The notes under the pieces: generated by a model | Databases searched by the model: none | Seen by the model: the letters and a program-made list of their open reading frames with translations, nothing else | What the model was told of the DNA's origin: nothing | In this document: positions 37,729-38,718 of the stretch, piece after piece | How positions within the stretch are numbered: position 1 is the first letter of the stretch | Layout of the letters: each line of letters begins with the position of its first letter | Program-made: the position numbers and the translations under genes | Source of the DNA: Macrostomum lignano | Lineage: Eukaryota | Direction: 5' to 3' | NCBI GenBank assembly: GCA_002269645.1 | Contig: NIVC01000417.1 | Coordinates: forward strand, 67,904 to 131,903 | DNA: 64,000 nt

Positions 37729-37902
37729 GTGACAGAATCCGCTGCCAGCAGACCTCATGGCTGGCTAGCCGTGGTTTGGCTACTCGGGACGCTGTTCACC
37801 TCCCCTGCTGAACGAGGCCATCGCTGATTTTGTCCGCTAAGATGGCGTTCCGCGACGATGGCCGGCCGGCGGCCACGTTCTGATGCTTGACGGCGCCGCC
37901 TA
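37729..37902 (+). pseudogene. Probable captured KDM3-like exon remnant (pre-JmjC region); second copy at 49584-49757
   Basis: GC-rich block bounded by CCCGCAG and GTGAGT; GVPRRWPAGGHVLMLDG weakly resembles the P(H/x)SW....LLxLxD segment preceding the KDM3 JmjC domain; in-frame TAA. Confidence 0.4.
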
Positions 37903-38021
37903 GTGAGTCATTGCATCCTACCACAACAGATAAGCACATTCCATCCATAATTGACTCGTCTAAAACAAATAGCCCCAGTCGTAATCCATAAATCCTTATC
38001 TGATTACAACTGTATCGTAAA

Positions 38022-38108
38022 TTCTGAATTGTACTTCTGAATTGTACTTCTGAATTGTACTTCTGAATTGTACTTCTGAATTGTACTTCTGAATTGTACT
38101 TCTGAATT
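38022..38108. repeat. 13-bp repeat TTCTGAATTGTAC x6.7 (also 49877-49963)
   Basis: Direct reading. Confidence 0.95.
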
Positions 38109-38525
38109 AACACCCCTCGTAAATTGAATTGCGAAGTATAAAAGTTCAGTAAAACAGAAATACTGAAGTATACTGAACTGACTAAAAATGACACTTTTAA
38201 AATATTTCGCAACAGCTGTAGCCAGGGGCGCGGATTTAGGGCTCTGGTGGGAGCGCCACTCCTCCCAGCGCTCCCTAGGAACTTTTATTACCTGGATACC
38301 TAGGTACTTCTTCCTAGGTACTAGAATTTACCTTGGCTAGTAATCGACATACTGATTTACTTTGCTAAAATTCTACAGTTTTTGACGCAAGCAAGGCTGG
38401 GCCGTTAAATCATTGATGAAACAAGTTACAACCTTAGAAACTGTAAATTAATATCACAAAACAGCCGACATGTATCGAAGCAACGAAACTAACCAGTCAA
38501 AAACACATTTTGCACTCTCATCCAG

Positions 38526-38718
38526 ATTCTGCCCGATCGCTACGAGGGCTTCTAGCGCGCTCTGCCGTTGCCGGAGTGCAGAGGGCGAGATTGCCGCCTG
38601 GCCACTCGGCTGCCGGCATTCTTTGTCCAGCCGGACCTGGAGCCCAGGATGTACAACGCCTATGGCCTGGCCGCTGCAATGTCATAGGGGCACCACAAAC
38701 CTGCACTTGGATATCGCC
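38526..38718 (+). pseudogene. KDM3: Captured KDM3/JMJD1 JmjC exon fragment, copy 1
   Basis: After TCCAG acceptor: ILPDRYEGF*RALPLPE...[23 protein letters not shown], then +1 frame GTTNLHLDI; matches KDM3 MPxRFEDL..[36 protein letters not shown]. In-frame TAG at 38553 and a frameshift near 38670-38685. Symbol is family-level. Confidence 0.88.

What the first reader, a model, noticed from the sequence alone, without database searches (positions are those of the whole stretch)
37729..38718. Transposon has captured exon remnants of an H3K9 demethylase (KDM3/JMJD1)
Seen: a pseudo-exon starting at an intact TCCAG acceptor encodes the KDM3-type JmjC segment up to the iron-binding HxD motif (LHLD), broken by a stop and a frameshift. 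A second splice-site-bounded block 0.6 kb upstream weakly resembles the pre-JmjC region, in the expected order and strand. Established: KDM3 removes H3K9me1/2, and TIR elements can capture host gene pieces (Pack-MULE/Pack-TIR). Inference: capture was from DNA, since splice sites are kept. Small RNAs against the element could cross-target a host anti-heterochromatin gene, creating a silencing conflict.
Basis: partly seen in the sequence, partly recalled or inferred. Interest (0 to 1): 0.85.

Follow-up and report, generated by a model that had tools for sequence, protein, structure and literature searches.

The report
Mobile DNA transposon carrying a dead KDM3 fragment
An 11-kb non-coding "cut-and-paste" transposon, present twice in this animal genome window, carries a short, broken 193-base piece of a histone H3K9 demethylase (KDM3) gene; this is an ordinary case of gene-fragment capture, and the proposed second exon and the "captured from genomic DNA" claim do not hold up.

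Summary
Block 2 (38526-38718, +) is real. It encodes KDM3B residues equivalent to MMPTRF...GTTNLHLD (phmmer vs PDB KDM3B E=1.6e-17). It is broken by one stop, a 1-nt insertion and a 6-nt deletion, and 7 of 29 invariant residues are changed.

It lies inside a genuine mobile element. Two 99.6-99.8% identical copies (36283-47945 and 48138-59256) have ~100-nt TIRs and different 8-bp target-site duplications. Copy 2 sits inside the TIR of a third, diverged relative. Both copies carry the identical dead fragment.

Block 1 (37729-37904) is a GC-rich island with splice-like borders. Its resemblance to the KDM3 pre-JmjC region is not above chance: 11-15% of shuffles score as well, and its reverse complement scores higher. 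The two-exon claim therefore falls.

The fragment runs uninterrupted across two ancient KDM3 intron positions, before "RF" and after "MYNAYG". Amphioxus and a sea anemone have both introns; starfish has the second. Its source was therefore intron-less (cDNA, retrogene or intron-poor parent), which argues against capture of genomic DNA with kept splice sites.

The small-RNA conflict idea is untested and is a published concept. Verdict: a Pack-TIR-like element, a new member of a known kind, of low to moderate interest.

The parts
36275..36282 (.). Left target-site duplication of copy 1 (GCGGGGAT)
   Evidence: Identical 8-mer at 47946-47953, immediately outside both element ends.
36283..36387 (+). 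Left terminal inverted repeat of copy 1. It starts CACCTAACGG and holds three 34-35-nt subrepeats (CCGnTArCGGnnCCCAnCCCACG).
   Evidence: 97-nt arms, 90% complementary to 47841-47937 (I2). Subrepeats are family D5. Ends read.
36388..37255 (+). Subterminal region shared with the diverged relative E3. It contains a conserved AAAG|GTAAGC donor-like site at about 36766.
   Evidence: 76% identity to 59233-60186. Homology stops at 37255/60186.
37566..37641 (+). End-like piece of another repeat (CAGTGTTGGGCACGATAC..., with GATAC/GTATC motifs), a sign of nested or composite structure
   Evidence: 87% match of 37580-37634 to 28148-28201. Motif search.
37642..37693 (+). Left arm of a 52-nt inverted repeat that encloses block 1
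   Evidence: 92% complementary to 38429-38480, with 735 nt between the arms (I1).
37729..37904 (+). Block 1: a GC-rich (63%) 176-nt island with splice-like borders (CAG|G ... TA|GTGAGT). Origin unknown; not demonstrably KDM3.
   Evidence: no signal above shuffles. No Pfam hit in six frames. No Rfam hit. GC profile.
38022..38108 (+). 13-nt tandem repeat (TTCTGAATTGTAC x 6.7) between the two blocks
38429..38480 (+). Right arm of the 52-nt inverted repeat. It ends 45 nt before block 2.
38526..38718 (+). Block 2: a decayed KDM3-type coding fragment of about 64 codons, from 'MLP.RF' through the HxD iron ligands. It has one stop (38553-38555), a 6-nt deletion and a 1-nt insertion near 38680.
39658..47515 (.). 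Internal satellite arrays (23-mer, 49/69-mer, 20/159-mer) that make up most of the element. There is no transposase ORF.
   Evidence: All ORFs of 70 aa or more are repeat-encoded.
47841..47945 (-). Right terminal inverted repeat of copy 1 (ends ...CCATAAACTG)
47946..47953 (.). Right target-site duplication of copy 1 (GCGGGGAT)
48138..59256 (+). Copy 2 of the element (11,119 nt), with TSD CAAAAAAT at 48130-48137 and 59257-59264. It carries the identical KDM3 fragment at 50381-50573.
   Evidence: 99.6-99.8% identity to copy 1; a 544-nt array-length difference.
48093..48137 (+). First 45 nt of a third, diverged family member (E3), split by the insertion of copy 2
   Evidence: Joining 48093-48137 to 59265 onward restores a left end colinear with copy 1.
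59265..60186 (+). Continuation of E3. It shares only the left roughly 960 nt with copies 1 and 2, and shows no KDM3 fragment within the window.

Best explanation
The window holds a non-autonomous terminal-inverted-repeat DNA transposon of 11.1-11.7 kb. It has ~100-nt TIRs built of three subrepeats and makes 8-bp target-site duplications. Its interior is mostly satellite arrays and nested repeat debris. It also carries, as a passenger, a 193-nt relic of the coding sequence of a KDM3/JMJD1-type H3K9 demethylase.

The relic covers only the stretch just N-terminal of the JmjC core up to the HxD iron ligands. It lacks the rest of the catalytic domain and is disabled by a stop, a frameshift, a deletion and many replacements. 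It therefore cannot encode a demethylase and is simply copied whenever the element transposes.

Shown: KDM3 homology of block 2. Shown: mobility of the carrier, from two near-identical copies with different TSDs, one inserted into a relative's TIR. Shown: identity of the relic in both copies, so the damage predates the latest transpositions.

Inferred: the piece entered an ancestor of this subfamily long before the recent jumps. Inferred: it came from an intron-less template (spliced mRNA/cDNA, a retrogene, or an intron-poor parent), because it is contiguous across two ancient intron positions. Inferred: it got in by template switching or gap repair, as described for Pack-TIRs, or by insertion of a retrocopy that was later trimmed.

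Block 1 is an unrelated or unidentifiable GC-rich exon-like piece, not a demonstrable KDM3 exon.
For: KDM3 identity of block 2. Best matches are Asterias and Branchiostoma KDM3, named.

Mobility: element ends CACCTAACGG...CCATAAACTG are flanked by GCGGGGAT/GCGGGGAT (copy 1) and CAAAAAAT/CAAAAAAT (copy 2). Removing copy 2 plus one TSD restores an intact left end of relative E3. The copies are 99.6-99.8% identical, with no differences in 37000-39050.

No coding capacity.

Decay: 7/29 invariant residues changed, plus a stop, an indel and a frameshift.

Intron-less source: amphioxus has introns before RFQDLM and after MYNAYG. Starfish has one after MYNAYG. Sea anemone has both. 47/54 unspliced ORF fragments break after MYNAYG. 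A spider KDM3A-like gene is single-exon, which shows that intron-less KDM3 copies exist.

Homology begins abruptly at 38523-38526; upstream scores below the shuffle mean.

Precedent: 370 Pack-TIRs in animal genomes, mostly hAT, only 4 of them multicopy (PMC8277862).
Against: The parent KDM3 gene of this organism could not be retrieved; the organism is unidentified and no eukaryotic genome search was available. The parent's intron positions, its identity to the fragment and the capture breakpoints are therefore unknown.

A lineage-specific intron exactly before 'ILPD', together with loss of the two ancient introns, would rescue the genomic-DNA capture reading. The CAG plus pyrimidine-rich tract at 38505-38525 is compatible with that.

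The superfamily is unassigned. 8-bp TSDs fit hAT, but the ~100-nt TIRs are atypical and no autonomous partner was seen.

Only two full copies and one relative are visible, all within 28 kb.

The fragment may have arrived inside a nested element rather than being captured by the large element itself.
Confidence: 0.85

Rival explanations
1. One reading: the element captured a stretch of genomic DNA from the KDM3 locus that contains two exons (blocks 1 and 2) with their splice sites and the intron between them.
For: Both blocks are GC-rich islands on the same strand, 620 nt apart, in an AT-rich context. Block 1 has CAG|G and |GTGAGT borders, and block 2 follows a pyrimidine-rich tract plus CAG. 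A weak colinear resemblance exists: 'PHGWL..LL' against KDM3 'PHSWLCDGRLL'.
Against: Block 1 similarity is at chance level: 15% and 11% of shuffles reach it, and the reverse complement scores higher. A 52-nt inverted repeat encloses block 1 but not block 2. Block 2 crosses two ancient intron positions without an intron. Its 5' border is 4 codons off the conserved intron site, and it has no donor at its 3' end. If 'PHSWL' were the match, roughly 95 codons of intervening exons would be missing.
Confidence: 0.1
2. The two copies are a tandem segmental duplication of a decayed KDM3 pseudogene locus riddled with repeats, not a transposon carrying a fragment.
For: The copies are adjacent (period about 11.86 kb) and nearly identical.
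Against: Each copy has its own perfect 8-bp TSD directly outside identical element ends. Copy 2 interrupts the TIR of a third element, and that TIR is restored by excising it. The 147-nt spacer and the flanks are not duplicated. No further KDM3 sequence exists around the fragment.
Confidence: 0.03
3. The fragment is the relic of a complete, intron-less KDM3-type demethylase gene once carried by an autonomous or larger ancestor of this element, for example as an anti-silencing factor, and later deleted down to 64 codons.
For: The intron-less state is what a transposon-borne retro-acquired gene would show. The relic is much older than the latest transpositions.
Against: No other KDM3 segment, no transposase and no long ORF occur in either copy or in E3. 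The homology borders are abrupt on both sides. Short passenger fragments are the rule for Pack-type elements (PMC8277862).
Confidence: 0.03

Closest known systems
Pack-TIR elements of animals (Tan et al. 2021, Nat Commun 12:4280, PMC8277862), the animal counterpart of plant Pack-MULE / Pack-TYPE elements
   Same: A non-autonomous TIR element with TSDs whose interior includes a short host-gene fragment. There are several transposed copies with distinct TSDs, like the four multicopy cases in that survey. The TSD length fits hAT, the superfamily most often involved there (208 of 370).
   Different: The element is very large (11 kb, against a 5-kb cap on the internal sequence in that survey) and is mostly satellite DNA. 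The fragment is old and decayed, whereas that survey required at least 90% identity to a parent. The parent copy and the autonomous partner are unidentified, so the formal criteria cannot be applied. The fragment appears to be intron-less, and such cases were deliberately discarded in that survey as possible retroduplicates.
KDM3A/KDM3B/JMJD1C (JHDM2) H3K9me1/2 demethylases
   Same: About 64 codons align with KDM3B residues 120-187 of PDB 6rbj_A. This includes the near-invariant [24 protein letters not shown] and TTNLHLD (HxD) motifs. Identity is 57-60% to amphioxus and starfish KDM3.
   Different: It is only a fragment. There is no Tudor or zinc-finger region, and the remaining roughly 165 residues of the JmjC barrel, including the second iron-binding His, are absent. 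It has a stop, a frameshift and a deletion, and 7 of 29 invariant residues are replaced. It is not a gene.
Gene capture leading to siRNA cross-talk between TE and donor gene ('epigenetic conflict', Muyle et al., bioRxiv 10.1101/777037)
   Different: That work is in maize, with 24-nt siRNAs and young captures. Here there are no small-RNA data, the organism is an unidentified animal, and the fragment has diverged substantially from any functional KDM3.

Membership tests
Pack-TIR / Pack-MULE-type gene-fragment-carrying TIR element | Terminal inverted repeats at both ends | tested here: met
   97-nt arms, 90% complementary, extending to about 105 nt with the CA...TG termini.
Pack-TIR / Pack-MULE-type gene-fragment-carrying TIR element | Target-site duplications directly flanking the ends | tested here: met
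   GCGGGGAT x2 for copy 1 and CAAAAAAT x2 for copy 2.
Pack-TIR / Pack-MULE-type gene-fragment-carrying TIR element | Internal sequence derived from a non-transposon host gene | tested here: met
   Block 2 matches KDM3B/JMJD1C, E=1.6e-17. Named KDM3 orthologues.
Pack-TIR / Pack-MULE-type gene-fragment-carrying TIR element | No transposase of its own | tested here: met
   All ORFs of 70 aa or more inside the element are satellite-encoded or overlap the blocks. No Pfam hits for the blocks.
Pack-TIR / Pack-MULE-type gene-fragment-carrying TIR element | Identifiable parental gene copy elsewhere in the same genome, not linked to TEs | not testable with these tools
   No genome of the source organism is available. 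Exact-protein and DNA look-ups found nothing.
Pack-TIR / Pack-MULE-type gene-fragment-carrying TIR element | TIRs belong to a known autonomous TIR family | not testable with these tools
   No repeat library was on hand. Only a diverged non-autonomous-looking relative (E3) is visible in the window.
hAT superfamily | 8-bp target-site duplication | tested here: met
   Two independent 8-bp TSDs.
hAT superfamily | Short (10-25 bp) TIRs beginning YARNG | tested here: inconclusive
   The ends are CACCT... and CAGTT... (reverse complement of the right end), with only 6/10 terminal bases matching. The strong inverted repeat is about 100 nt and subterminal.
hAT superfamily | hAT transposase (BED/RNase-H-like/hAT dimerisation domain) in autonomous members | not testable with these tools
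   No autonomous member is in the window.
Mutator-like elements (Pack-MULE in the strict sense) | 9-11-bp TSD with long (100 bp or more) TIRs | tested here: not met
   The TIR length fits, but both TSDs are 8 bp.
KDM3/JMJD1 demethylase gene | Complete JmjC domain with HxD...H iron triad in an open reading frame | tested here: not met
   Only KDM3B residues 120-187 of the PDB construct are represented, broken by a stop and a frameshift. Nothing downstream of LHLDI matches.

The most novel reading that the evidence does not exclude
The 193-nt relic is what remains of an intron-less, retro-acquired KDM3-type H3K9 demethylase gene that this transposon family, or an autonomous relative still present elsewhere in the genome, carried as a counter-silencing factor. 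Alternatively, small RNAs raised against the multicopy relic still cross-target the host KDM3 transcript.
Probability: 0.04. Interest if true: 0.8.

Novelty: new member of a known kind. Interest (0 to 1): 0.25.

Why it matters
Gene-fragment capture by cut-and-paste transposons is well documented in plants and has been catalogued in animals. In the one large animal survey, only about 1% of cases were multicopy, meaning actually mobilised after capture. This element adds a clear example with direct TSD evidence of repeated transposition, and with a chromatin-modifier fragment as passenger.

As it stands it is a decayed, non-coding hitchhiker with no evidence of function. Its main practical value is as an annotation caveat: gene finders may call a spurious KDM3-like exon twice in this region. 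It is also a marker for tracing this transposon subfamily. It would matter more only if genome-wide data showed longer KDM3 reading frames in family members, or small-RNA cross-talk with the host KDM3.

Tried and rejected
(1) The word-indexed protein search with the repaired fragment and with the window's kinase ORF returned nothing usable, so the organism and the parent gene could not be found that way.

The 43-aa in-frame stretch was used instead.

(3) Exact-product look-ups of the two window ORFs overlapping block 1 and block 2 found no other contigs.

(4) Two metagenome scans, with the TIR core and with the conserved subterminal 35-mer, gave 0 hits.

(5) Rfam on the whole element gave nothing at E<=1.

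(6) Pfam on six frames of block 1 and on block 2 gave nothing. Block 2 lies mostly N-terminal of the Pfam JmjC model.

(7) blastn of the window against the amphioxus, starfish and sea-anemone KDM3 loci found no shared repeats, so there is no taxon assignment. The exon-level nucleotide identity of the fragment is only 62-75%.

(8) An in-frame upstream extension ('SKQRN*PVKNTF' against 'LKLKDWPPAEDF') suggested by two tblastn alignments was tested and scores below the shuffle mean, so it was rejected.

(9) Similarity between the left flank of copy 1 and the inter-copy spacer was suspected by eye but is not supported.

(10) Look-ups for the Diadema, Anneissia and Babylonia KDM3 loci were not on record.

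Full report
**Context.** The window is metazoan nuclear DNA, about 41% GC and full of tandem arrays.
- It holds a MAP4K-like gene (kinase plus CNH domains) on the minus strand at 11.6-16.8 kb.
- It holds an intact non-LTR retrotransposon ORF (RT plus RNase H) at 23479-25965.
- It holds a PAN/fibrinogen gene at 30.6-32.7 kb.
- The organism could not be identified with the tools available.

**Block 2 is a genuine KDM3 fragment.**
- After 'tctcatCCAG' the sequence 38526-38718 translates, allowing one frameshift, to [50 protein letters not shown](C H R)GTTNLHLDI.
- phmmer against all PDB chains returns only KDM3B (E=1.6e-17) and JMJD1C (E=3.5e-14) as significant hits. The alignment covers KDM3B '[67 protein letters not shown]'. 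I checked that reference sequence against PDB 6rbj_A.
- tblastn inside the window gives E=7e-13, plus a second identical hit at 50381-50573.
- An exhaustive HMMER search of 1.84 billion representatives with the 43-aa open stretch returned 110 hits. Every one of them that I read or that a source names is a KDM3-type sequence. The best full-length matches are named KDM3B or JMJD1C-like proteins of Branchiostoma and Asterias.
- The lesions are a TAG at 38553-38555, a 2-codon deletion and a 1-nt insertion just before GTTNLHLD. With that insertion removed, the spacing YG-(8 residues)-TTN is exactly that of KDM3, and the second apparent stop is out of frame.
- At 29 alignment columns invariant in 24 diverse KDM3 proteins, the fragment differs at 7.
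- Nothing downstream of LHLDI and nothing upstream of 38523 resembles KDM3. The relic is about 64 codons and cannot encode an enzyme.

**Block 1 is not demonstrably KDM3.**
- 37729-37904 is a 176-nt GC-rich island bounded by CAG|G and TA|GTGAGT.
- I built a profile of the 127 pre-JmjC columns from 24 KDM3 proteins.
- That profile finds nothing in any of the six frames of the whole window.
- It scores about 0 bits on block 1 alone.
- The best pairwise score is 38, within the shuffle distribution: 33.7+-4.2, with 59/400 shuffles at or above 38.
- A frameshift-tolerant profile alignment I wrote gives 25.3 against 21.3+-3.2 (32/300 shuffles). The reverse complement of block 1 scores higher, at 28.2.
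- The eye-catching 'PHGWL..LL' against 'PHSWLCDGRLL' match competes with a second, out-of-frame match of the same motif. That is what chance in GC-rich sequence looks like.
- Block 1 has no Pfam or Rfam match.
- Structurally, a 52-nt inverted repeat (37642-37693 / 38429-38480, 92%) encloses block 1 and the 13-mer array but excludes block 2. The two blocks therefore sit in different sub-units.

**The carrier is a real, recently active transposon.**
- A 97-nt inverted repeat links 36291-36387 with 47841-47937, and 48146-48242 with 59152-59248.
- Reading the ends gives two copies, each running from CACCTAACGG to CCATAAACTG.
- Copy 1 is 36283-47945, flanked by GCGGGGAT on both sides.
- Copy 2 is 48138-59256, flanked by CAAAAAAT on both sides.
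- Copy 2 has landed inside the left TIR of a third, diverged relative, E3. Joining 48093-48137 to 59265 onward restores a left end colinear with copy 1.
- E3 shares only its first roughly 960 nt with the other two (76% identity), up to 37255/60186.
- Copies 1 and 2 are 99.6-99.8% identical, apart from a 544-nt length difference in a satellite array. They have no differences between 37000 and 39050.
- The element has no transposase. Its interior is satellite arrays, a MITE-like insert and an interstitial (AACCCT)5.
- Two independent 8-bp TSDs fit hAT best, although the long subrepeat-containing TIRs are atypical. I leave the superfamily open.
- This disposes of the 'tandem segmental duplication' and 'pseudogene locus' rivals.

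**Where the fragment came from.** I fetched KDM3 loci of the nearest named homologues.
- In Branchiostoma lanceolatum the region is split as ...EMLPR | RFQDLM...MYNAYG | [15 protein letters not shown]....
- In Asterias rubens one exon runs from LETKHG... to MYNAYG, followed by an intron.
- In the sea anemone Actinostola both introns and one more are present.
- Among 54 informative short unspliced ORF fragments from the representative search, 47 diverge immediately after MYNAYG.
- The window's fragment is contiguous across both positions. Its 5' border lies 4 codons upstream of the conserved 'RF' intron, and it has no GT at its 3' border.
- The simplest reading is an intron-less template: spliced mRNA/cDNA, a retrogene, or an intron-poor parent. 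The single-exon KDM3A-like gene of the spider Argiope shows that retrogenes of this family exist.
- The CAG in front of the block is then coincidental, or belongs to the recipient sequence.
- This step is an inference. It would be overturned by a parent gene with an exon boundary exactly at ILPD.

**Age and function.** The relic is far more decayed than the 0.1-0.4% divergence of the two copies. It was therefore already dead in the master copy and has been carried passively. I found no evidence of function. It cannot be tested without small-RNA data and the parent sequence, and the inferred divergence makes extensive cross-targeting less likely, though not impossible.

**Comparison with known systems.** The object works like, and is best filed with, animal Pack-TIRs (PMC8277862). 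That survey found 370 cases in 100 genomes, 208 of them hAT-associated and only four multicopy. This case is multicopy by TSD evidence. It would nevertheless have failed that survey's filters on size, on age of the capture and on the intron-less fragment. Two defining features, a parental copy and a known autonomous family, could not be tested. It is a new member of a known kind and of low to moderate interest.

Noticed in passing
window 36283-60186: Three members of one TIR family lie within 24 kb: copy 1, and copy 2 nested in the TIR of E3, which starts 147 nt after copy 1's right TSD. This pattern suggests local hopping or a preference for inserting into its own TIR sequence.
   Followed up: partly
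window 37642-37693 and 38429-38480 (also 49497-49548 / 50284-50335): A 52-nt, 92% inverted repeat encloses 735 nt: block 1, a 13-mer array and a small GC-rich hairpin at about 38222-38280. No TSD is evident. It could be a foldback or MITE-like insert, or a hairpin-RNA source.
   Followed up: partly
window 10090-10345 (+) and 33634-33890 (-): Two copies of a roughly 250-nt repeat in inverted orientation, 23 kb apart (145 nt at 99% identity). One end looks tRNA-derived (…GGTTGTAGCCTAGTGGTTAGAGCGTCGGACT… on the opposite strand), so it is probably a SINE. The pair brackets the MAP4K gene, the non-LTR element and the PAN/fibrinogen gene.
   Followed up: no
window 23479-25965 (+): An uninterrupted 828-aa ORF with reverse transcriptase and RNase H domains (non-LTR retrotransposon ORF2), possibly still active.
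   Followed up: no
window 44311-44511 (and the equivalent in copy 2): A MITE-like insert with ends CAGCGGTTCTCAACC... / ...GATTGAGAACCACTGG and internal GGGTCGCGACCC motifs, nested in the element. Seen by eye; the repeat finder did not report it at seed 10.
   Followed up: partly
window 39139-39170 (and 50995-51026): An interstitial telomere-type repeat (AACCCT)x5.3 inside the transposon.
   Followed up: no
window 36760-36775 and 59680-59695: A donor-like AAAG|GTAAGCAAACG is conserved between copies 1 and 2 and the diverged E3, in the subterminal region. It may be a remnant first exon or 5'UTR of the ancestral transposase gene and a possible start of chimeric transcripts.
   Followed up: no
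window 60374-60603: A near-perfect 84-nt palindrome (99% complementary, 62-nt loop) inside E3.
   Followed up: no
window 19004-20065 (-): Two adjacent ORFs (135 and 185 aa) with a hAT-transposase-like flavour (…[12 protein letters not shown]…) but no Pfam hit at E<=0.01. Possibly a decayed transposase unrelated to the element studied.
   Followed up: partly
L004 (Argiope bruennichi OX387450.1) 501-4544: The spider 'lysine-specific demethylase 3A-like' gene is a single 4,044-nt exon, so it is apparently a retrogene copy of KDM3.
   Followed up: no
window 11619-16829 (-): A MAP4K-like host gene (kinase C-lobe at 16410-16829, CNH domain at 11619-13352). It has a long poly-Q tract at about 15.9-16.1 kb and large intronic minisatellites (a 34-mer x58 at 13487-15472).
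   Followed up: no
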